The notes beneath the pieces are model-generated. The model made no database searches and was not told the origin of the DNA. It worked only from the letters and a program-made list of their open reading frames with translations. Made by a program: the position numbers and the translations under genes. A stretch of 62,631 nt of DNA, counting the filler, from Hausera hauseri (Eukaryota): assembly GCA_046269625.1 (NCBI GenBank). It is 10 parts of 10 records of this genome, joined end to end, with 100 filler letters (N's around TTAATTAATTAA, not from the genome) between each part and the next. Parts side by side here need not be neighbours in the genome. Positions count along the whole stretch, not along the records: positions 20,673 to 32,274 come from JBJURY010084435.1; 9 more parts are not named here. One strand, given 5' to 3'. The first letter of the stretch is position 1. Each line of letters starts with the position of its first letter. Positions 20,673-32,274 of the stretch are shown here, one piece after another.

Positions 20673-20816
20673 AGAAATCAATGGCAAGTCGGAACCATCA
20701 GTCAACTATATCCAGGAAAAGATGGTATCACTAGAATCGTAGAGATCGAAATCGATGGAAAACAAATCATTCGGCCAGTAAAGAAAATATGCAAAGTCGA
20801 AAACGATTTAAATTAA
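20673..20816 (+). mobile_element. C-terminal end of a BEL/Pao integrase
   Basis: RNQWQVGTISQLYPGKDGITRIVEIEIDGKQIIRPVKKICKVE*, the DUF5641-type C-terminal motif. Confidence 0.85.
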
Positions 20817-21542
20817 AACGCTAACAATTAAAAATAAACTAATATGAATATATAATAAGTAAATATAGAAAATATATATATTGAGTCGTGGGTTGTTAAG
20901 AATCGTTGATCTTTTACTAAATAAATAAAAGAATAGAGTAAATCAAGTCCTTCTAAGCTACAAAAATTGTTTCTTTAGATGTTGAATCCTTATAAAGTGA
21001 CTAACTATTTCCTTTCAGGTTACCACTTGATCTCGCCTGAATAACGCTAGTCACTAAAATAGCATTGATGTAAAATAGTTATTGGTGTTAAATAAATCTC
21101 TTTTACTTGATGAAATCATATCGGTTGAAATCTTAGTCTTCGTAGTAATCTGTGTCTGACACATGATATTGTTAAATGTAATTCAGTTGTCTTGCTATTC
21201 CACCTACATATCGATCACTTCTTATAACTTTAGAAACCTTAAAACATTCTTTGTTATTCGTCATTTATTTATCTATAACTTTAGTAAACACCCTTTTTCT
21301 TCATTTTGAATGTAATATGGATGATTTAAAAACATTATGAGGTTGATGTTTTAATTGAATTTTATTCACTTTTCGAGGTTTCCCTCTCATTACTCAAAAA
21401 GTCCTTTAATTCGTTTTCGTGAATAGCGTGAGTTAAATTTAAATGTTCGTCAAAGAAATTTTCTCTATAATTAAGGTTAAATAAAGCTAAGTAGCACAAA
21501 CCTATAATTCTTTCTTTTGTTTGTTGAAGACGGAATGCCTTC

Positions 21543-21570
21543 AAAAAGGGGGGAAAATGTATAGATCAAA
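21543..21570 (+). promoter_or_regulatory. Polypurine tract and LTR start of that BEL/Pao element
   Basis: AAAAAGGGGGGAAAA followed by TGTATAG at 21558; closely resembles the PPT of element A. Confidence 0.65.
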
Positions 21571-21930
21571 AATAATTAATTAAAATCAGAGGTGGGGGCT
21601 GAGACGGCTGGCGATGGTGTATCGCGGTGTAAATCACGATTTCGGCCAAACAACTATAATTCTAATGATAACGAATTCCATAGACTCGTGGAACAAATGT
21701 TATCAGAACAGATATGGCTTGTAACTATCAAATCGACGAAGAATAAATCGTAGCTAGGATTTATAAAGCAAGATGACCTTTCTCATGTAAATTGTGTAAA
21801 GTTTTCTTTATTTTGTGAACTTTATATGAGTTTTTTATTTTTTTGTTTAAAACGTTGTCAAGAAGATTGAATTTTGTAGACGTTAAAAAATAGAAATTAG
21901 AAATCGTGTTGAATCGATAATTTTCAAATT

Positions 21931-24900
21931 TTGAATAGTAAGCAGACTTTTATCCGTGTTAAAGAAAGTTATATTTTGTCTGTGTTAATGAAAATGGACC
22001 GAAAAGAAAGTAAAGTATTAAAAAGAAATGATGATGAAACACTGAGAATTACATTTGGCATCTCAGGTGGGACTCTCTCAAAATCCAAAACAGAAAAACC
22101 CATTGTTCATTTTCTAAAATTACAATTAGATGTCTTCAGTTGTTACAAAAGAAACAGAGGTTGTACAGTGACGAAATTACCCAATACTTATTTCATAGAA
22201 CAGAAAATGTTTTATTTGTTTATATATATTTGTGAAATTGAATGCGTGAGTGCGAAAATTAATCCGGTTGAAATTCAAGAAAAGCGTCCTTGGATTTATG
22301 ACGCCGAGAAAAATGTAATGGTTTATGGAAAGAAAGTTCATCAAGGTTCCAAAAAACAAGCCAAAGATTCGGAGAAAAGTCGCATGAAGTTGAGCGAAAA
22401 GTGGGAAATTTTCAAAATAAACAATGTTGAGAATGAAAACGGTGCGAAACGAGTGAAATGTATGCAGAAGGTGTATGCAGAATGGGAACAGTTACCCAAA
22501 TTTGAAAATCCGAATGAATCAATTTATTACCGACTAAAGTTCAAAATAATTTTTCCAAAAGAACTTGAAACAAACTATTATTCAGTTATTACCAATACAT
22601 CGTCATATGAAATTGAATTGAAAGACGACCCAGCACATGGTGTTGCTTGTGAGTTTAAACTCTCGAGGTTTGATAATCAAAATCCAAAAAAAGAAGCCGT
22701 AAAAATCGTAACACTGCCAGAAGAAAAACCAACGAAACCACCAAGAGATATTAAAATATTCAACATGACATCCAGTTCTATAAATCTTGTCTGGAAAAGT
22801 CCAGATGCACGTTTTCGAAATGGAAAAATCATAGTTTACGAAATTGAACTTAAGGCTATTATTCCAGACAAAGTGTTGGAAGTAAAAAACGTTACAAATA
22901 ACTCCATTACTTTAACAAATTTTCAAAACCAAAAATACAGTGTCAAAATTCGATGTTACACAAACAAGGGAAGTGGACCATGGACAGACTACTTTTACTT
23001 TACTTTCAGTCCTGTAGATATTCGTCCACCAGATTCAATTAAAGCCTTTCGAGTAAGTGAAACAAAAATTAAAGTAACGTGGAGGATTCCAAAAAATGGT
23101 GACTTCCAGCCATTAGAATTTCTAAAAAATGTACTTGGTTTCGTCGTATATTACGCTACAACTGATACATCCGACATAACTTCTGAATGGGCTTCTGAAA
23201 AATTATATGAAGAAGTTTATAGTCATAAAATAAAAAATATCAAATCAACCAAAGATTATTTCATACGAATGAGTTTAGTCGATCGGTATTACCGAATTGG
23301 TATTTGGTCAGATCCAATAAGGCCGAAACGAATTGCTTCAAGCTCATACGAAGAACGAATAGTCAAAAATTTTAAATGTTGTTCGACACAAGACAGATCT
23401 ATAGAAGTATGTGGTGAATATCCAAATAATACTGAGGCGTTAGAAAAAATACTCATTTCATATACTGGTCAAAATATTTACTGGTCTGAGGAAAATTCCC
23501 AAAAACTTGAATTAACAAAAGAAACCAGCACTATATGTTTATACAAACCGAAATTATTGGAATTCGCTGAAACATTACAAGAACTAAATCCGTTTACAAA
23601 ATATACAATTCAAGCCACGCCAGTTTATTCAAAATTATCAGAAATTAATTCGAATTTCATTTTATCTACCACAATAGAGTGTAAATCATTAGCAGCTGCT
23701 CCAAGCGAAGTTCGTCAACCAGAAATTTTGGTAGATGTGAATTCAAAGCAAATACTGAGAATATATCGATGTTCTGAACGAAACGGAAATATAAAGTATT
23801 ATCATTTAATAATAACACCTTTCAAAGGATTGAATAATGTCATGATCCCGTCATATGTGAACGATCCCAACTCATTGGCCATCATGGAATTGGCAACAAA
23901 ATTAAATATGAAAGATGATAAGGCTCACATTATTGTATTTTCCATATCGATCAATGATTTATTTAAAAACGATCTTTTTACGGACTTCATAATTGCAGAT
24001 AGTATTATACCCAAACATTACAATAGTGGAGCAAATGATATCTTGTTTTACAGATCAGCTCTTAGAGCATGTATTGAGACATTCGAAGGTAAACCCTTGT
24101 GTAATACTAGTTTATGGTCAGAACCATTTGTTCTGTCCGAAACGTATTCTGGAAATACTCTAACAAAACCAGTACTTCAATTTTCAAATGGTGACTCAAA
24201 ATTGAGAAATGAAAATCAAAACGTCATAACATTATCGGTAACCTTATCCGGTATTTTGATAGCCGTTATTAGCATAATTACTGGCTGTGTTGTACATAAA
24301 CGGAAAAGTCTTAAGAAAAAGTGGAGCTTTGCCGAACACATAAATTCTCCAGAGATTCTTCAAGATGCTCAATTTAAGCCTTTGATGTCAGTCAACTCTT
24401 CGAAAGTAGACAGAGTACTTCCTGAACCGAATCATACTCATTATAATGTAAATTCACTCCAAAATCATCAGAAAAATGTTCATTCTGTTTGTTTGAATTT
24501 TAACTCAGTTCCAAGTCATCAAAGTCCCTTACTCAAAAAACGAGAAGAAGAAGCTCCTAATTTAGTAAATATCAAAGACAATCCATTATACTCTCTCAAC
24601 AATTCATTTCATCCAAAAACTGAGGCCCAGAAACATTCAAATCATGATTCAGAAATCTTAATCAGTGATATAATTGGTAATTTATCGCGTTTATTTATAA
24701 ACTATATGATTAAGGAAATTGATCAAATTGATTTCCTTATGACGTTCTTGAAGGAATTACATGTTTTATATGCTACGTGCATTCTTGGACTGTGGAATTA
24801 CAAACGTTTCCTGCGGATATTTAAATCGGAAAATTTTGTTAAACCTGCAGAAACTGCCAAGGTATTTGATGATTTGAATTTGGGAATGCATGTAGTTTCT

Positions 24901-27900
24901 CAGGCTGGCCAAAAAGAAGTATCAGTGAAAGAAATGAAAGCAATGACAATATTTCATCTTACTGATTTAAATGTTAGAGGTATTAAGCATCGTTTGAGTC
25001 AACTTGAAGCAAGACCAAAAAGAATGGCAACGGTTAATTCTAGGTATAAAGAAATCTCTTCATCTGATGAATCTGACGTATATACCAGTGACTCACCAGT
25101 TGACGGATATATGCTGCAGATTGAATGCAATAATGATGAAAAATGGACCAATCTATCTGACGATCTTATTGTGAATCTTCGATATAATTGCAAAGCAATA
25201 CCTAGCAAAACAGCACCAATAAGGTTTAGAGTGGCGGCAGTAAACAACATCGGTATGAGCGATTACTGTTGTATTGATAAACCATTTTCATTTGAAAGTG
25301 AATTGAAATCAAACAAACCAGAAAATTTACGTCCACTCGAAGATTCAAAAGTCCTTTTATCAAGCAAAATAATCCTTAAATGTGAATATAAATTGGGAAC
25401 CCTTGAAGCAAAAGTCATTTGGTTGAAAGATAATAAACTTTTAAGAGGTATCACAAGAGCAGATGTAAACATAACAAAGACCTATGCCAAATTTGTTATC
25501 GAAATGTCAAAGATTGAAGATGCAGGGTGTTACATGTATCGATTGGAAAATGACTTTGGTACAGATTTATGTAAATCTCTAAACGGACCGAATTCGACCT
25601 GTTACGATCTTCCATCGGGCTATGGTTGTCTTTGTCCCAAGGGTTACCTCAACAGTAAAACCAATCCCCAACTGTGTACTGATGACAATGAATGTCTCAC
25701 ATTAAAACATGATTATCCAATCGGAATCAGTGTTTGCCAAAATACATTCGGTAGTTATAAGTGCCAATGTAAAACCAGTTTTACAAACGAATCATCGGGA
25801 AATTGTACAGATGTAGACGAATGTAAATTGGGAAAGGTCAAATGTAAAAATGGCATTTGCATAAATACCCCAGGATCATATCTATGTAACTGTAATGCCG
25901 GATTTCTTCTTGTAAATAACGCCTGTGAAGATATTGATGAATGTTCATTGGACAGTGCTAGTGTTACGTTTTCGATTTGTGATAAGGTAAATGGCGACTG
26001 TATCAACACAAATGGCAGTTACAATTGCACATGTGCAAAGAGATATAGTATGAGTAATACGTCAACAACGTGTATGGATATTGATGAATGTTCATATCCT
26101 GATACTTGTTTAAATGGACTCTGTAAAAATATCCCCGGTGGCTTTGAATGTGTGTGTAGTCAAGGGCATAAATTGGACAATGGAAAATGTACAGAAATTG
26201 ACGAATGTGCCGACAAACCAGACAGGTGCGGTACATCCGATGCTGGAACTTGTGTTAATTTGCCGGGAACATTCAAGTGCAATTGTTCATCGGGTTGTAA
26301 AAATTTCGGCAAAGTACCGACTGCTGAATGTGTTCGGACAAATCAATGTTTACGAAACAACGTCAAATGCCAAGCGGATATTAATATTGATTCAACACAT
26401 AATATATACAAAATGTTCAATGGATTGATGACCTTGGTAACTTCTCTACGATCGACACTTGCAGAATACAAAGAACAATTGGAATCGATTTTAAAAAATG
26501 AAAAAAGTGCTCTTCTTCTTCGAAATGAACAACTTCTTATTCAATTGGGTGAGTCAAGTAACGCACTCGAAAGCGATGTTGCAGAAAAGTTGTGTTTTCT
26601 GGAAGAAGAATTGTGTAAAGAACGTCTATCAAATTTAAGGCAACAAAATGAAATTGATGGTCTCAAACGTCTCCAACCAAATGACATGCAACATATAAAA
26701 TGTTTATATTGTGAAAAACCGAATGCTATTACGCAATTTCCATCAGAACAAACCAACGATGTTCGTCGGAGTTTTTCAACAGTAGAAAATAAATATTCTA
26801 CAAATTTAAACGATTTTGAGAAAAGTGAAAAGAAGTATTCATCATGTGATAATATCAATGCATCCAATGTTGGTGAAACGGTAGAAACCGATGACTTCTT
26901 ATTGTCTCCCGATAAACTCAGAGATGACATTGATGAATCGAGGAACTATTTCTTGTCTACCGACGATCTTGTAAATATGCCCAGGTACAAAATTAGCAGA
27001 ACCCAACCTAATGTAGATGATATTGAAGGTATAATTGAAAATTCGTGGTTGAAAGTTGGCCCTAGTGACGGAGATAGAAGATCATCGATTTTCTCTCAAA
27101 ACGTCTGCGGTACACAGCAACCAGCCGAAAGTAATGAAGATGAAAGCAATGTCCAAAGTTCCGTAATATGTCCAGTACAGAACAAATTAAAAAGAACGAG
27201 AAGTCGAAGCTCCTCCAGAAGCAGCTCGAATGATACGAGTGATGCTAACAGTGTAGATGTTTTAGAAGAACAAAAAAAATTGGCTCAGGAATTAGAAATT
27301 CGGAATTCACGAATGACATCAAAATCTCCAGCCATATCCTTGTTAAATAGTAGTCTTTTGTCGGATGATTTGAAATCAGTCACGCCAACAGCATTTGAAA
27401 TTGATCCTGAGTTGATCAAATCTGATAAAGTCGAGTATTTTCCAAATATGACAAGACGTGTATCATCGACATCCTTAGATGATAAAACGTCAACAGAAGT
27501 TCCCGTAACCGTGTTGGAGACTGATGCAGGGATTCAATCATATATTAGTTTATACGATGAAACTGATCGGGGATCTAAAACTACTGTACCAGATTCTCAA
27601 AATGCCGAAATTAAATCCAAACTACCCATTATATCAGTTGACGAAATAGATCAGATTGATTTTCAAGTAAATCAATTAAATGTAAGTTTGGAAGATAGTT
27701 CAAGGGGAATAGAGGAATCAACTGATGACTTTATAATGGAACCATTAGCAAAGCCATTTACCAGCTCTAGACGTTCTCCAATATCCTCGACAAGTGATGA
27801 ACAACTTAAAGAAAATCGTAGACCCAAACATGTCAGAGGTAGAAGGCCTAACACTATTATTGGATTGACTGGATCCATTCAAAAAGAGTTGTCAGAAGAT

Positions 27901-30900
27901 ATTTCAAGTCTATGCGATGATTCCGTAACAAATGATGATTTATCAGATATAAAAGACGCTGCTACAATGTTAAAAGAGATGAGTGACGCTCTAGCTAATT
28001 TGACACCTGAAGAATTAGAAAATAAGTTTTCTGAAGTGAGTTTAATGTACAAAACTGATCGGCCAACACTTGTAGATAGAACTTGTGATGCCAATACTAA
28101 ATGTAACAGAGCACTCCACAATGTCGAACAGGAATTTAATATATTAAGGCATTTAGTTAAAACTTTATCATCTACTGTGGACCAACCAACAGAATTAATG
28201 ACTCGAGTTAAGACATCCGTTAATGTTTTGGAAAAATGCGTACAATACTTATCGGCAAGATCAGAAATATTCGGTGCATCACAACAGATTAATTTGTTTG
28301 GAATTTATGAGGAAGAGATGAAAACGGCATCCATCTCGGACGTAATGCAAGAGTACAGTTTACGGATTACGAAACAAAGAGACGAAATGTTGAAATCATT
28401 GAATGAGGAGCTGACAATGTTATCTACAGAAGTGGCATTACGTCAGCAATTACGTCAGACAGAGGATGCAACGACAGCTGAGGATAGAGAAGTAGCATTA
28501 CGTCAGCAATTACGTCAGACAGAGGATGCATTGGCATGTGCAGATCAACAAATTGAGGAGTTGACAATGGCCAATGAGACATCCTTGCAGGAATTACGTA
28601 ATCAATTACGTCAGGTCGTTGGAGAACGTGATGAAATGTTCCATCGATTACAGGATACTGAAATGGAATTATTGGATAGTACAAAAAGTCTGTCGACATT
28701 ACAAAATGTGTTAGATAAATTTCAACAAGATCAGTCATCAGATATGGCCTTTGAACGAGTGGAAGAGCTTTTGAGAATGCAAACGGTTCTCTTTAGAACC
28801 ACATTTCTTGATTGCGACGGGGTATCAGATCCCCTTAAAAAATCTGTGACATTTGTTAAATTTGCAGTGAAAATTCGATACATATTAGACTACGATGGGA
28901 CGAGCTACAGATGTCATCACGGATTTCGTCGATGTTACGATAAAAACGCACTCTGCTTAGAAGACAAAGTCTTGTCAGTCAATGACGAAATAACATACGG
29001 GATTCCGCCTAAGCTGACTTCGGTATTGAGGACTGACACGGAGAACAAAATTCAATTTAGACCTAAGGAGCAAATTAATACTTCAAAGGTTAGAAATTGT
29101 ATCATTGTTATACATCGCCGCCGATCGTTTTTGTCCCTTTCCCGGGTCTTACGTCTGGATCAAAGAGATCATAAAAAACCCACTCGCGCATGTAAAGTTC
29201 ACGCGATTATTAAATTGATTGATATAATTGTTTCCTCATTAAAAGAATGTTCCACTTCATCTAGCTTGGAACCGTATAAAGTTGTTAAAGTTAATGTATA
29301 CATAAGTTTCTATATAGACGTATATCACGCCAGACCTGTACTAATACCGAGACAGATAATCGGAAAATTTGAAATCGAAAAAAGTAACCAATTATCTGTT
29401 GGGGGGTGTTCCTTGTTTAATAAAGGTTATAAAAATACTAAAATTAGAATCGAAATGAACATACGCCTTTTAACTGAGTGTACACGTATGCTTATGAACG
29501 TCTTAATACTCTTTAGTAATATTTTAAATTATAATAAAGATGACACTTATTTTAAGATATTACAAAACAAATTCCTCAATAGTCAGCGTACAAGTCATTT
29601 ATATGCTGACGATAAAATAATACTAGAAGAACGACCAATAAATCTTTCGAGAAAAATTCAATTACATGATATGGATAATCAAGTTACCAATGAAAAATCA
29701 CTAAAGATATCTAAGTTCATATTGGTAACACTGGATAAATTAAAAATAATACGTAGCATTAGAAATAAACTTCCGGAAATCACTACAGGTAAAGCAAGAA
29801 AAATAAATTATAGAAATAGTGTAGAAATTCGTCCACTACCTAATATGGATGTCGAGAACGTTAAAAAATTATCGGAAGTCAAGTATAAACAAATAATCAT
29901 AAAAATAAACCAGAACTCTCCTATAGTTGTTGACGTTGATGAAACTGAGTCCATTAATTCATTAAAGCAAAAAATATCAAAGAAATGTCACATAAAAATG
30001 GAGGAAATTGAGATCATTTACAAAAACAAGAAATGGAGGGACTATGAGACTTTACATAGAATCTCGCATGGGACGACCTTGAACATCAATTATGGATTGA
30101 AAGGAGGGAGCGCCGGTGAAATTGAGGACTTTGAAAGTAGAATTTTAGCAAAGGATGTACTGAGAGTTGAATTGACTATCCAGAGGAAGTCACTGATGAA
30201 TAAAAAATTGACAGAAGATGAGTTTCTGCAACAAAATGATAATTATGACGAAATCTTTAAAAAACTCTCCATTGAGCTCAGCACTTTGAAGCTACTCGCT
30301 AGAAAATTGAAGAAAAAGGAAGAATTAGCAGAACTAGTCGATGAATCAAAAAATATTGAGATACAAAATGAGGAAGTGATAAAGATGATTCACATGAAGA
30401 ATTTCACGACCTTAGAAAAAGGGAAGGAAAAAGAGACTTATAATGAATATTTAGCACCTAAGCTGAAACGTGTTGAACTCCCAAAATTCTGTGGAAATGT
30501 TGCTGAGTTTGAGAAATGGAAGCAGATCTTCAAAACATGTATAGATAAAACGTCCCTCTCCAGTACAGATAAGCAAATCCAACTAGAAAATTCCTTGTAC
30601 GGAGAAGCTAAACGTTTAGTCCAAAATTACGATCTTTCTGAAACATCCTACAAGGCAGCACTCGAAAAATTGGAACGATACTATGGGGGAAATCATAGAA
30701 ACTATGCATCCCTTATGTCGGAAGTTATGGGATTTCAAAAGATAAGCACACATAACATTAAAGAGTTGGATTCCTTCACCATATTGTTAGACTCAGTCAT
30801 TTTGAGGTTGAAGAATTTGAATCGAGAGACAGAGTTAGAAGATGGACTGTTGTATCAAAGCTTAATTCAGAAACTACCTGAAATTATGGTATTAACGTGG

Positions 30901-32274
30901 GAACGTTATCGAGAAGACAAAGATAAGAAGCGAAATGTGTATAATTTAAAGGCTTGGGTGGAGAAGGAAGCGGAACTAAAACGTATAGCGGCGGAAGGAG
31001 TTCATGGAATAAATGTTCTAACACTATACAGAGATAAACACTCCGAAAGACCGATAAAGAATTCCTTTTATACTAATGGGAAAGTAGAAAAACCTACACG
31101 AACAAACAAAATCGGAAGTAACACCAAAGAAGATAGAGGTAGGAGGAATGACAATTGTCAGGGAAATTTAGGAAGTCAGAAAAAACTCTGTAAATATTTT
31201 GAAATCGGTAAATGTCGTTTTGGTAATTCATGTACATTCCTACACGAGGAGAAAAATTATAAAAATACGAATCAAAAACCTTGTTCATATTTTTTAAGAG
31301 GGAGTTGTAGATACGGTAATAATTGTCGGTTTAAACATGAAAAAATCCCGGATATCAATAGACCAGAGATTGACTGTTCAGAAACTCTTGACAAAAATTT
31401 ACACAGAAATGAGATATCCAGAACTTCAATTGATATTGATAGGAATAAAACACTACCGAATGTGAATCATCGTCAAACAAAAGAGAGTGAATCCTCAGAA
31501 AAGCGAATCTTTATGACAAAAATGGGAAGTGAAGAACTCGGGACGCAAGATAAGGTAGCATTAAGAACAATTTCGGTATACTTAATTCATGGGAAAAGGA
31601 AAGTCAAGGTAAACATGTTATTAGACGATGCTAGTACAGATAGTTTCCTCGAGGAAGACATCATACAACAATTAGGACTTTGTGGAAGAGAAGAAGAGAT
31701 TACAGTAGCAGTGATCGGAGGTAGCCAACAGAAACAAAAAGCGACGAGAGTTAAAACGACCTTACAAAGTTTAGATGGTGGTATCTGTGAACAATTCAAT
31801 GCATTGTCTATAAGGAAGCCAACGGGAAATATGAAGGTTATCAATTGGGCTATAGAAAAGAAATATTGGTCTCATTTGCGAGGTATCGAATTTACAAAAA
31901 CGGGAACAAACGAGTACGTCGATGGAATTATTGGAGCGGATTATATACACCTCCATAGATCTATAAGAGAAGTTTCAGGTAAGATAGGGGGGCCGATAGC
32001 TAGATTGACACCCCTCGGTTGGACATGCGTTGGAACGCTAAACGTATCCGTAAATAAATTAACACGTAGTAATCTAGTACGTACTTACTGGACAAGAACA
32101 GATGAGATGAACGAAGATATAAGGAGGTTGTGGGAAGTTGAAAATTCAATTGAAGAAAAGGAAGCTTGGTCAAAATTAGACAAAGAAATTATACAAGTTA
32201 CAAAAAATGGGATAAAAAAGACGGAAGAAGGAAGATACGAGGTTTCTCTACCTTGGAAGGAGAACATGGATGAA
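21931..32274 (+). CDS. Mosaic ORF of over 3400 codons: host gene fragments fused to BEL/Pao Gag-PR (probably chimeric)
   Basis: Uninterrupted frame: FN3 repeats plus TM (~22471-24300), FN3/Ig (~25090-25560), calcium-binding EGF repeats (~25560-26380), Ser-rich and coiled-coil blocks (~26400-28750), then retroelement domains from ~29845. Low confidence that this is one real protein. Confidence 0.4.
22471..24680 (+). CDS. LAR/PTPR-type receptor fragment (FN3 repeats, TM, juxtamembrane; no PTP domain)
   Basis: VTLPEEKPTKPPRDI...SINLVWKSPDARFRNGKIIVYEI...YTNKGSGPWT; CSERNGNIKYYHLII; TM ITLSVTLSGILIAVISIITGCVV followed by HKRK. Confidence 0.7.
25561..26380 (+). CDS. Tandem calcium-binding EGF repeats (fibrillin/fibulin-like fragment)
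   Basis: Repeated D(I/V)DEC...C.NT.GSY.C.C units. Confidence 0.85.
27990..28400 (+). CDS. MRVI1/LRMP(IRAG)-like coiled-coil fragment
   Basis: LTPEELENKFSEVSLMYKTDRPTLVDR and LSARSEIFGA resemble the conserved MRVI1 domain as recalled. Confidence 0.55.
29845..32274 (+). mobile_element. BEL/Pao element C, intact 5' part: UBL(GG)-Gag-2xCCCH-protease; truncated by the spacer
   Basis: UBL 29884-30108 ending NYGLKGG; PKLKRVELPKFCGNVAEFEKWKQIF; CCCH pair 31189-31338; VNMLLDDASTDSF; GPIARLTPLGWTCVG; GRYEVSLPWK. Confidence 0.93.

What the first reader, a model, noticed from the sequence alone, without database searches (positions are those of the whole stretch)
29884..30108. BEL/Pao lineage with a ubiquitin-like leader ending in Gly-Gly fused to Gag
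Seen: element C has a 75-aa UBL ending HGTTLNINYGLKGG|S directly before Gag. The divergent element A on another contig has HG*TIHVMRRL*GG|S at the same position (GG at 6403-6398). Two independent copies make a chimera artefact unlikely. Established: linear ubiquitin fusions are cut after GG by host deubiquitinases, and pestiviruses use captured ubiquitin as a processing signal. Inference: a host DUB or ULP releases Gag with a defined N-terminal Ser, or the freed UBL acts as a conjugatable modifier or decoy. I am not aware of this as a described BEL/Pao feature.
Basis: partly seen in the sequence, partly recalled or inferred. Interest (0 to 1): 0.85.

Follow-up and report, generated by a model that had tools for sequence, protein, structure and literature searches.

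The report
Ubiquitin fused to a retrotransposon Gag
A lineage of BEL/Pao retrotransposons in animals carries a captured ubiquitin, still ending in Gly-Gly, fused directly in front of its capsid (Gag) protein, so host ubiquitin-cutting enzymes probably release Gag; I found no paper describing this.

Summary
Residues 15-88 of the polyprotein (29887-30108) pass Pfam's ubiquitin threshold. They fold as a beta-grasp that overlays solved ubiquitin at about 1 A. They end in L-K-G-G, aligned with ubiquitin 73-76, directly before Ser89 and a BEL/Pao Gag (DUF1759).

It is not an assembly chimera. Contigs from four independent public runs cross the joint. Eight other proteins from unrelated assemblies (25-44% identical) show the same colinear UBL-GG-Gag layout. 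In a Gag tree the nine UBL-bearing sequences sit on one side of a single branch, against 42 Gags that have long N-termini and no UBL.

Across the nine tails, L73 and G76 never change, G75 changes once, and the next residue is Ser in six. This holds although identity to ubiquitin falls from 80% to 30%. This copy has lost L8, H68, V70 and R72.

Best reading: a ubiquitin-fusion processing signal cut by host deubiquitinases, like UBA52, RPS27A or FUBI-eS30. Cleavage was not tested.

The N-terminal limit is unresolved, because the frame stays open far upstream. I found no published description. I rate it a new variant of known kinds.

The parts
28776..29844 (+). Upstream part of the repeat unit: either LTR plus leader, or an unrecognised N-terminal coding extension. 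It is stop-free in the Gag frame.
   Evidence: Several contigs in X1 and X2 diverge from the window before 28775. There are 0 in-frame stops against 28 and 49 in the other frames. No Pfam hit. Variants among runs are 2 synonymous to 7 non-synonymous. Its role is unresolved.
29845..29886 (+). Nearest in-frame ATG and a 14-residue extension in front of the UBL
   Evidence: P0069 and P0003 have a Met 15-16 codons before their UBL. The start codon is inferred, not shown.
29887..30108 (+). Ubiquitin-like domain (K15-G88), 30% identical to ubiquitin
   Evidence: PF00240 at 33.8 bits. Aligns with ubiquitin 2-76. Beta-grasp model. Foldseek top hits are ubiquitin. Identity figure.
30097..30111 (+). Tail L-K-G-G followed by Ser89: the predicted deubiquitinase cleavage site, after G88 (30108|30109)
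   Evidence: L73 9/9, G76 9/9, G75 8/9, K/R74 8/9, and the next residue is Ser in 6/9 family members. pLDDT is below 50 for residues 84-88, as expected of a flexible tail.
30109..30429 (+). Acidic start and three long helices at the N-terminus of Gag
   Evidence: AlphaFold2 helices 90-117, 124-155 and 158-195. Colinear with all relatives.
30487..30921 (+). BEL/Pao Gag core (DUF1759)
   Evidence: PF03564 at 66.1 bits, E 4.7e-18.
31189..31338 (+). Two CCCH zinc fingers (C-x7-C-x5-C-x3-H) where BEL/Pao normally has CCHC knuckles
   Evidence: zf-CCCH_4, zf-CCCH and zf_CCCH_4 all above threshold. Coordinates. Shared with P0002; P0037 keeps CCHC-type knuckles.
31603..31950 (+). Aspartic-protease region with the motif LLDDAST (31618-31638)
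   Evidence: Asp_protease_2 at E 0.002 and DUF1758 at E 0.083, both below threshold. The motif is shared with P0002 and P0037.
32248..32274 (+). LPWKEN motif that precedes the reverse transcriptase; the frame is cut here by the end of the piece
   Evidence: The Logan contig of X1 runs about 2 kb beyond the piece.

Best explanation
This is the 5' half of a BEL/Pao-type LTR retrotransposon whose polyprotein reads: short extension, ubiquitin-derived domain, L-K-G-G, then Ser-Gag (helical region, DUF1759, two CCCH fingers), protease, and onward. An ancestor of this lineage captured a host ubiquitin coding unit in frame, directly upstream of gag (shown by comparison). The domain most likely works as a linear ubiquitin-fusion processing signal: host deubiquitinases cut after Gly88 during or soon after translation. 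That would release Gag with a free N-terminus, plus a small ubiquitin-like product. The ubiquitin moiety could also help synthesis and folding of the downstream protein, as it does in the cellular fusion genes UBA52, RPS27A and FAU. Both the cleavage and this helper role are inferred. In this copy the receptor and E1 surfaces have decayed, so the cleavable tail on a stable beta-grasp appears to be what selection keeps. In relatives whose UBL is 58-80% identical to ubiquitin, the released product may still act as ubiquitin.
For: Domain, fold and GG register. The joint is contiguous in contigs of four runs from four studies. The same colinear architecture occurs in P0003, P0024, P0046, P0037, P0069, P0078, P0002 and P0159, from ENA, JGI and UniParc-derived sources. 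UBL-bearing Gags sit on one side of one branch against 42 UBL-less Gags (1 change, SH-aLRT 81, 0 of 500 shuffles as low). Tail conservation: L73 9/9, G76 9/9, G75 8/9, K/R74 8/9. Window against P0159: tail 9/15 identical, body 12/57, Fisher p 0.008. P0159's UBL is invisible to Pfam, yet it keeps GLKGG followed by Ser and a beta-grasp model with a floppy tail. Variants among runs in Gag-PR are 14 synonymous to 10 non-synonymous, which suggests a family under purifying selection. From established knowledge: linear ubiquitin fusions are cut after GG by cellular DUBs whatever follows, except Pro. The diverged UBL FUBI is cut from eS30 by USP36 (PMC8354635, PMC10611586).
Against: No cleavage was observed, and no proteomic or RNA evidence is available. 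The run search listed no RNA holders. This copy lacks L8, H68, V70 and R72. Many USP-type DUBs also contact those residues, so cutting may be inefficient or need a specialised enzyme. The UBL is not at the extreme N-terminus, and the frame is open for kilobases upstream, so the true N-terminal product is unknown. The host is unidentified, because run names are coded. The homologues are single-member clusters from metagenome-type contigs without taxonomy.
Confidence: 0.55

Rival explanations
1. The UBL is not cut off. It stays as an integral N-terminal domain of Gag and docks Gag or the polyprotein to ubiquitin receptors such as ESCRT, proteasome shuttle factors or UBA/UIM proteins. Precedents are the UBL of Ddi1, Rad23 and ubiquilin, and experiments in which ubiquitin fused to retroviral Gag replaces a late domain (my own knowledge).
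For: The whole beta-grasp is kept, not just the tail. I44 and K48 are retained in this copy. In P0003, P0024 and P0046 the UBL is much better conserved than Gag: 54-67% against 20-35% identity. That points to selection on ubiquitin surfaces in those lineages.
Against: A free L-x-G-G tail followed by a non-Pro residue is a DUB substrate by default, and non-cleaved UBL domains normally lack GG. In this copy the L8/V70/H68 receptor patch is gone, while L73, G75 and G76 are kept. An uncleaved N-terminal ubiquitin would also be expected to trigger ubiquitin-fusion degradation (established knowledge).
Confidence: 0.2
2. It is a neutral relic. A single old in-frame capture of host ubiquitin is passively inherited and slowly decaying, with no role in the element's life cycle.
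For: This copy is only 30% identical to ubiquitin, and P0159's UBL is no longer detected by Pfam. P0069 has lost G75 and has a deletion. Only 9 of about 150 related Gag representatives carry a UBL.
Against: The domain has survived divergence down to 20-38% Gag-domain identity without loss, frameshift or fold collapse. The tail is significantly better kept than the body. A useless 75-residue N-terminal block on Gag would be expected to be deleted quickly in an active family.
Confidence: 0.15
3. The released product is the point. The element supplies ubiquitin, or a ubiquitin mimic or decoy, in 1:1 ratio with Gag. This would feed Gag ubiquitination and budding, or disturb host ubiquitin signalling.
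For: P0003 is 80% and P0024 72% identical to ubiquitin, with most lysines and the R-L-R-G-G or similar tail intact. In those lineages the UBL evolves more slowly than Gag.
Against: This cannot be the family-wide function. The window and P0159 have Gly at position 72 and have lost the hydrophobic patch, so activation by the ubiquitin E1 is unlikely (established role of R72). High identity could also come from repeated recapture of host ubiquitin.
Confidence: 0.08
4. It is an assembly or gene-model chimera that joins a host ubiquitin exon to a transposon gag.
For: The piece itself looks chimeric. One frame is stop-free for 10.36 kb across unrelated host-like domains. P0002 also runs in frame from the protease into an unrelated coiled coil.
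Against: Independent contigs in four runs cross the joint: X1 29504-32274, X2 29610-31646, X3 29799-30216, X4 30079-309 bases beyond 30000 (30079-30309). Nine diverged sequences share the same joint and the same downstream linker.
Confidence: 0.02

Closest known systems
Cellular ubiquitin-fusion precursor genes (UBA52/eL40, RPS27A/eS31, polyubiquitin)
   Same: A ubiquitin unit ending in GG is translated in frame directly ahead of an unrelated protein. It is expected to be removed by deubiquitinases, and the ubiquitin part aids production of the partner.
   Different: The partner here is a retrotransposon Gag-Pol polyprotein. The unit lacks Met1 and has an N-terminal extension. This copy is only 30% identical to ubiquitin.
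FUBI-eS30 (FAU), cut by USP36/USP16 (PMC8354635, PMC10611586)
   Same: A strongly diverged UBL keeps the beta-grasp and the GG tail and serves mainly as a removable leader. This is the best functional analogue for the window's copy.
   Different: FUBI is a host gene with a dedicated nucleolar protease. There is no evidence that the transposon UBL descends from FUBI, and its relatives point to ubiquitin itself (P0003 is 80% identical).
Ubiquitin insertions in cytopathogenic pestiviruses (BVDV) (my own knowledge)
   Same: Host ubiquitin is captured by a replicating element and used as a host-protease processing site inside a polyprotein.
   Different: Those are sporadic recombinants of an RNA virus within single infections. 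Here the capture is fixed and inherited across a deep retrotransposon lineage.
Canonical BEL/Pao (Belpaoviridae) Gag
   Same: DUF1759 core, Gag-protease order, and the LPW motif before the RT.
   Different: 42 related Gags with at least 190 residues ahead of the core have no UBL. This sub-lineage also has CCCH fingers instead of CCHC knuckles.
Ddi1/DDI2 (UBL plus retropepsin-like protease)
   Same: An N-terminal UBL, a helical region and a retroviral-type aspartic protease on one polypeptide.
   Different: The Ddi1 UBL has no GG tail and is not removed. Ddi1 has no Gag, and it is pan-eukaryotic and older than BEL/Pao. This is a resemblance in architecture only and was not tested here.

Membership tests
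Ubiquitin family (PF00240, beta-grasp) | Sequence matches the family profile above the curated threshold | tested here: met
   33.8 bits against a gathering score of 25.4, E 2.9e-8. Aligns with ubiquitin 2-76 in PDB sequences.
Ubiquitin family (PF00240, beta-grasp) | Beta-grasp fold | tested here: met
   AlphaFold2 strands 15-21, 27-31, 55-59 and 78-83 with helix 37-48. Foldseek top hits are ubiquitin, target TM 0.85-0.91.
Ubiquitin family (PF00240, beta-grasp) | C-terminal Gly-Gly in register with G75-G76 | tested here: met
Ubiquitin proper (conjugation-competent) | E1 and receptor determinants: R72 and the L8/I44/V70/H68 patch | tested here: not met
   The window has G72, N8, N70 and N68; only I44 and K48 are kept. 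It is ubiquitin-derived, but it should not be filed as functional ubiquitin.
Linear ubiquitin-fusion precursors | An unrelated protein follows GG directly, and the next residue is not Pro | tested here: met
   Ser89 then Gag. Relatives have S, G, M or N.
Linear ubiquitin-fusion precursors | Cleavage after GG by a deubiquitinase | not testable with these tools
Linear ubiquitin-fusion precursors | The ubiquitin unit starts the protein at Met1 | tested here: not met
   Position 1 is K here, I, I and G in relatives, and M only in P0003. All have upstream in-frame residues.
BEL/Pao LTR retrotransposons (Belpaoviridae) | Gag with a DUF1759 core | tested here: met
   66.1 bits. 147 of the top 150 homologues are DUF1759-type Gags.
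BEL/Pao LTR retrotransposons (Belpaoviridae) | Pao-type aspartic peptidase downstream of Gag | tested here: inconclusive
   Only sub-threshold hits: DUF1758 at E 0.083 and Asp_protease_2 at E 0.002. The motif reads D-D-A instead of D-S/T-G.
BEL/Pao LTR retrotransposons (Belpaoviridae) | RT, RNase H and integrase with a DUF5641 tail | not testable with these tools
   The piece ends at 32274, before the RT. A DUF5641 tail of another element lies at 20673-20813.
BEL/Pao LTR retrotransposons (Belpaoviridae) | Long terminal repeats and a primer-binding site | tested here: inconclusive
   No repeat pair within the piece. A repeat border is seen near 28775. No tRNA or PBS was identified.
BEL/Pao LTR retrotransposons (Belpaoviridae) | CCHC knuckles in the nucleocapsid part of Gag | tested here: not met
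   Two CCCH fingers stand there instead. The relative P0037 keeps CCHC-type knuckles.

The most novel reading that the evidence does not exclude
A whole BEL/Pao lineage has made its Gag maturation depend on the host deubiquitinase system by fixing a captured ubiquitin as a polyprotein processing module. The module exists in two states. In one it is near-canonical ubiquitin kept under stronger constraint than Gag itself, so each translation event delivers one usable ubiquitin per Gag. In the other it is a stripped-down beta-grasp with only the cleavable tail, as in this window. That would be a new type of host-transposon interface, and a natural retroelement counterpart of both the pestivirus ubiquitin insertions and the ribosomal ubiquitin-fusion genes.
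Probability: 0.3. Interest if true: 0.78.

Novelty: new variant of a known kind. Interest (0 to 1): 0.62.

Why it matters
LTR retroelements are thought to process their polyproteins with their own aspartic protease, and fixed acquisition of extra host domains is rare. A heritable ubiquitin-Gag fusion with a conserved GG site would add a host-enzyme-dependent maturation step to a retrotransposon. It would also be a natural experiment on which parts of ubiquitin must be kept for a fusion to be processed: here the fold, T66, L73, K/R74, G75 and G76. Finally, it would tie transposon activity to the host ubiquitin system in a way that is simple to test biochemically.

Tried and rejected
- Word-indexed protein search with the 440-aa query found only the fragment P0001.
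- The search with a UBL-Gag alignment was swamped by polyubiquitins.
- The search with a UBL-poor alignment added only P0159.
- The search for related loci failed on the wide alignment. It found nothing in metagenome contigs or viral contigs.
- The second metagenome scan returned only L001, an unrelated UBL fused to another protein and lacking GG. I discarded it.
- The ESM Atlas gave only generic DUF1759 clusters, and none with PF00240 plus PF03564.
- Cluster look-up gave no names or taxa.
DNA context of the homologues and earlier notes could therefore not be used.
- No LTR pair, no tRNA and no Rfam family was found in the piece.
- I looked for homology between the upstream extensions of the window, P0159, P0024 and P0003 and found nothing significant.
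- I looked for splice-like signatures at the contig break points 27542, 27850, 28695 and 28775 and found nothing clear.
- Complex prediction was not used, because no eukaryotic deubiquitinase sequence is available to it.

Full report
**What is there.** Only 20673-32274 of the window is sequence. In the frame of 29845 there is an ATG at 29845, then 14 codons, then a 74-residue unit (K15-G88, 29887-30108). The unit ends in ...N-Y-G-L-K-G-G and is followed by Ser89 at 30109. Pfam places the 88-residue leader in the ubiquitin family above the curated threshold (33.8 bits against 25.4, E 2.9e-8).

Downstream, Pfam finds DUF1759, the BEL/Pao Gag core, at 66 bits. It also finds two CCCH zinc fingers and a weak aspartic-protease match. 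The frame is cut by the end of the piece just after an LPWKEN motif, before any reverse transcriptase.

**Is it ubiquitin-like?** A search of PDB sequences aligns residues 16-88 with ubiquitin 2-76, so the two glycines fall on G75-G76. An AlphaFold2 model built on an eight-row alignment has mean pLDDT 77.8. It shows the beta-grasp order of strands and helix for 15-83, a low-confidence tail for 84-88, and three long helices for 90-195. In Foldseek against the PDB, essentially all top hits are ubiquitin or NEDD8, with target TM 0.85-0.91 and rmsd about 1-2 A over 72-78 columns.

**Is the joint real?** There is reason for caution, because the piece is odd. One + frame has no stop from 21913 to 32274 (10.36 kb), while the other two have 291 and 417 stops. 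That frame crosses an fn3 domain, a membrane span, an I-set Ig domain, five EGF_CA repeats and an MRVI1-like coiled coil. Only then does it reach the element. So the piece may be a spliced or chimeric path.

The UBL-Gag joint does not depend on the piece, however. Logan contigs from four runs, coded as four different studies and organisms, cross 30108/30109:
- X1: a 4833-nt contig covers 29504-32274 with two differences and runs on for 2 kb.
- X2: 29610-31646.
- X3: 29799-30216.
- X4: 30079-30309.

These are contigs of unknown library type. They show contiguity, not expression.

**Is it a lineage feature?** An exhaustive phmmer search of 1.84 billion representatives, using residues 1-440, gave 2778 hits. 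Nearly all are DUF1759 Gags. In six of the top 150 the alignment or a UBL profile finds a ubiquitin unit directly upstream of the same Gag: P0003, P0024, P0046, P0037, P0069 and P0078. P0002 starts with a remnant of seven residues ending K-L-K-G-G before Ser.

A later search added P0159. It is 40% identical and colinear with the window from the UBL through Gag, and its UBL ends in H-G-L-K-G-G before Ser. Pfam no longer detects that UBL. Even so, its model is again a beta-grasp with a floppy tail, with the caveat that ubiquitin-like rows were in its alignment.

These proteins come from ENA and JGI assemblies and one UniParc-derived entry. All are single-member clusters without names or taxa.

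I built a Gag-domain tree of 145 rows, leaving out the very long branch P0065. The nine UBL-bearing rows lie on one side of a single branch against 42 rows that have at least 190 residues upstream of the Gag core and no UBL. That is one change, with SH-aLRT 81, and no shuffle of 500 was as low (the first tree is). One origin is therefore compatible with the data, although it is not proven. The other 94 rows are N-terminally too short to score.

**What is conserved.** Identity to a canonical ubiquitin unit falls as follows:

| Sequence | Identity to ubiquitin |
|---|---|
| P0003 | 80% |
| P0024 | 72% |
| P0046 | 58% |
| P0037 | 50% |
| P0069 | 49% |
| Window | 30% |

Across the nine tails, T66 is unchanged in 8/8, L73 in 9/9 and G76 in 9/9. 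G75 is kept in 8/9; the exception, P0069, also has a deletion and looks decayed. Position 74 is K or R in 8/9. The residue after GG is Ser in six copies and G, M or N in the other three, followed by an acidic stretch.

Between the window and P0159, the last 15 UBL residues are 9/15 identical against 12/57 for the body (Fisher p 0.008). The window has lost L8, H68, V70, R42 and R72 but keeps I44 and K48.

Two regimes appear. Among P0003, P0024 and P0046 the UBL is far better conserved than the Gag core (54-67% against 20-35%). For the window it is the reverse (23-30% against 30-38%).

Differences among the four runs in Gag-PR are 14 synonymous to 10 non-synonymous. That suggests a family under purifying selection.

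**How it most likely works.**
- Shown: a ubiquitin-derived beta-grasp with an intact L-K/R-G-G tail is fused in frame to Gag, and this has been inherited through deep divergence.
- From established knowledge: linear ubiquitin fusions are cleaved after G76 by cellular deubiquitinases whatever residue follows, except proline. L73 and the two glycines are the critical tail determinants. The diverged UBL FUBI is removed from eS30 by USP36/USP16 (PMC8354635, PMC10611586).
- Inferred: host deubiquitinases cut after G88 and free Gag starting at Ser89. The domain is retained because it provides this processing step and perhaps helps synthesis of Gag.

The conjugatable-modifier idea does not fit this copy, which has Gly at position 72 and a degraded hydrophobic patch. 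It remains possible for the near-canonical relatives. The rivals (uncleaved docking domain, neutral relic, ubiquitin supply, chimera) are weighed in the Rival explanations section.

**Limits.** The true N-terminus is unknown. Ubiquitin's Met1 is replaced in all members except P0003, and all have in-frame residues upstream. In the window the frame stays open through 28776-29844.
- For coding there: codon-position periodicity similar to Gag's.
- Against coding there: variants are 2 synonymous to 7 non-synonymous, there is no Pfam hit, and there is no homology to the upstream parts of relatives.

Several contigs diverge from the window before 28775 and 27850, which marks repeat borders there. No LTR pair, PBS or tRNA was found. 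The host is unidentified: an AT-rich animal genome of about 30-40% GC. No RNA evidence is available.

**Known or new?** Six full-text searches found no paper describing a ubiquitin or UBL fused to a BEL/Pao Gag or to any retrotransposon Gag. The searches combined BEL/Pao, Belpaoviridae, DUF1759, LTR retrotransposon, Gag and ubiquitin terms. A review of giant transposons mentions ubiquitination-related extra domains only in planarian Burro elements, which are a different case.

The library covers open-access papers only. At least one such protein, P0069, sits in a UniParc-derived set, so the architecture is probably listed silently in domain databases. I file it as a new variant of known kinds (BEL/Pao element, ubiquitin-fusion precursor), with interest 0.62.

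Noticed in passing
window 21913-32274 (+ frame of 29845): A single frame has no stop codon for 10.36 kb, while the other two + frames have 291 and 417 stops. It runs through unrelated host-like domains: fn3 22738-22995, a membrane span, I-set Ig 25330-25572, five EGF_CA repeats from 25810, and an MRVI1-like coiled coil 27994-28287. It then continues into the transposon. The homologue P0002 likewise runs in frame from its protease into an unrelated coiled coil. This could be a spliced model, a chimeric or protein-guided assembly path, or something real. It is unexplained.
   Followed up: partly
window 20673-20813: The piece starts with the C-terminal tail (DUF5641, E 6e-10) of the pol of another BEL/Pao element, ending at a stop at 20814. 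About 1.1 kb follows with stops in all frames and no similarity to the region upstream of the UBL element.
   Followed up: partly
window 31189-31245 and 31282-31338: Two CCCH zinc fingers (C-x7-C-x5-C-x3-H) occupy the place of the CCHC nucleocapsid knuckles. They are shared with P0002, while the UBL-bearing relative P0037 still has CCHC-type knuckles. This may be a second host-domain replacement in this sub-lineage.
   Followed up: partly
window 31618-31638: The protease active-site region reads L-L-D-D-A-S-T (D-D-A where retropepsins have D-S/T-G). It is identical in P0002 and P0037. Pfam matches to DUF1758 and Asp_protease_2 are only sub-threshold.
   Followed up: no
window 29300-31300 (runs X1-X10): Near-identical words of the element occur in ten runs filed under ten different coded organisms and studies, with shares from 0.96 down to 0.08. 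X3 and X4 contigs are mostly at least 99% identical. The cause could be close relatives, a shared cobiont or contaminant, or horizontal spread. The names are coded, so this was not resolved.
   Followed up: no
window 27850 and 28775: Contigs of several runs break away from the window at these two places, and depth in X2 jumps from about 17 to 170-430 at 27850. Two nested repeat borders therefore lie upstream of the UBL. The coiled-coil segment 27850-28775 is itself repeated.
   Followed up: partly
window 28425-28544: A tandem 60-nt duplication (85% identical) encodes a repeated A-L-R-Q-Q-L-R-Q-T-E-D-A motif in the coiled-coil segment.
   Followed up: no
L001 144-413: An unrelated AT-rich contig (JAEEGL016063698.1) encodes a ubiquitin-like domain without a GG tail, fused to a 450-residue protein of unknown family. 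It is not a transposon Gag.
   Followed up: no
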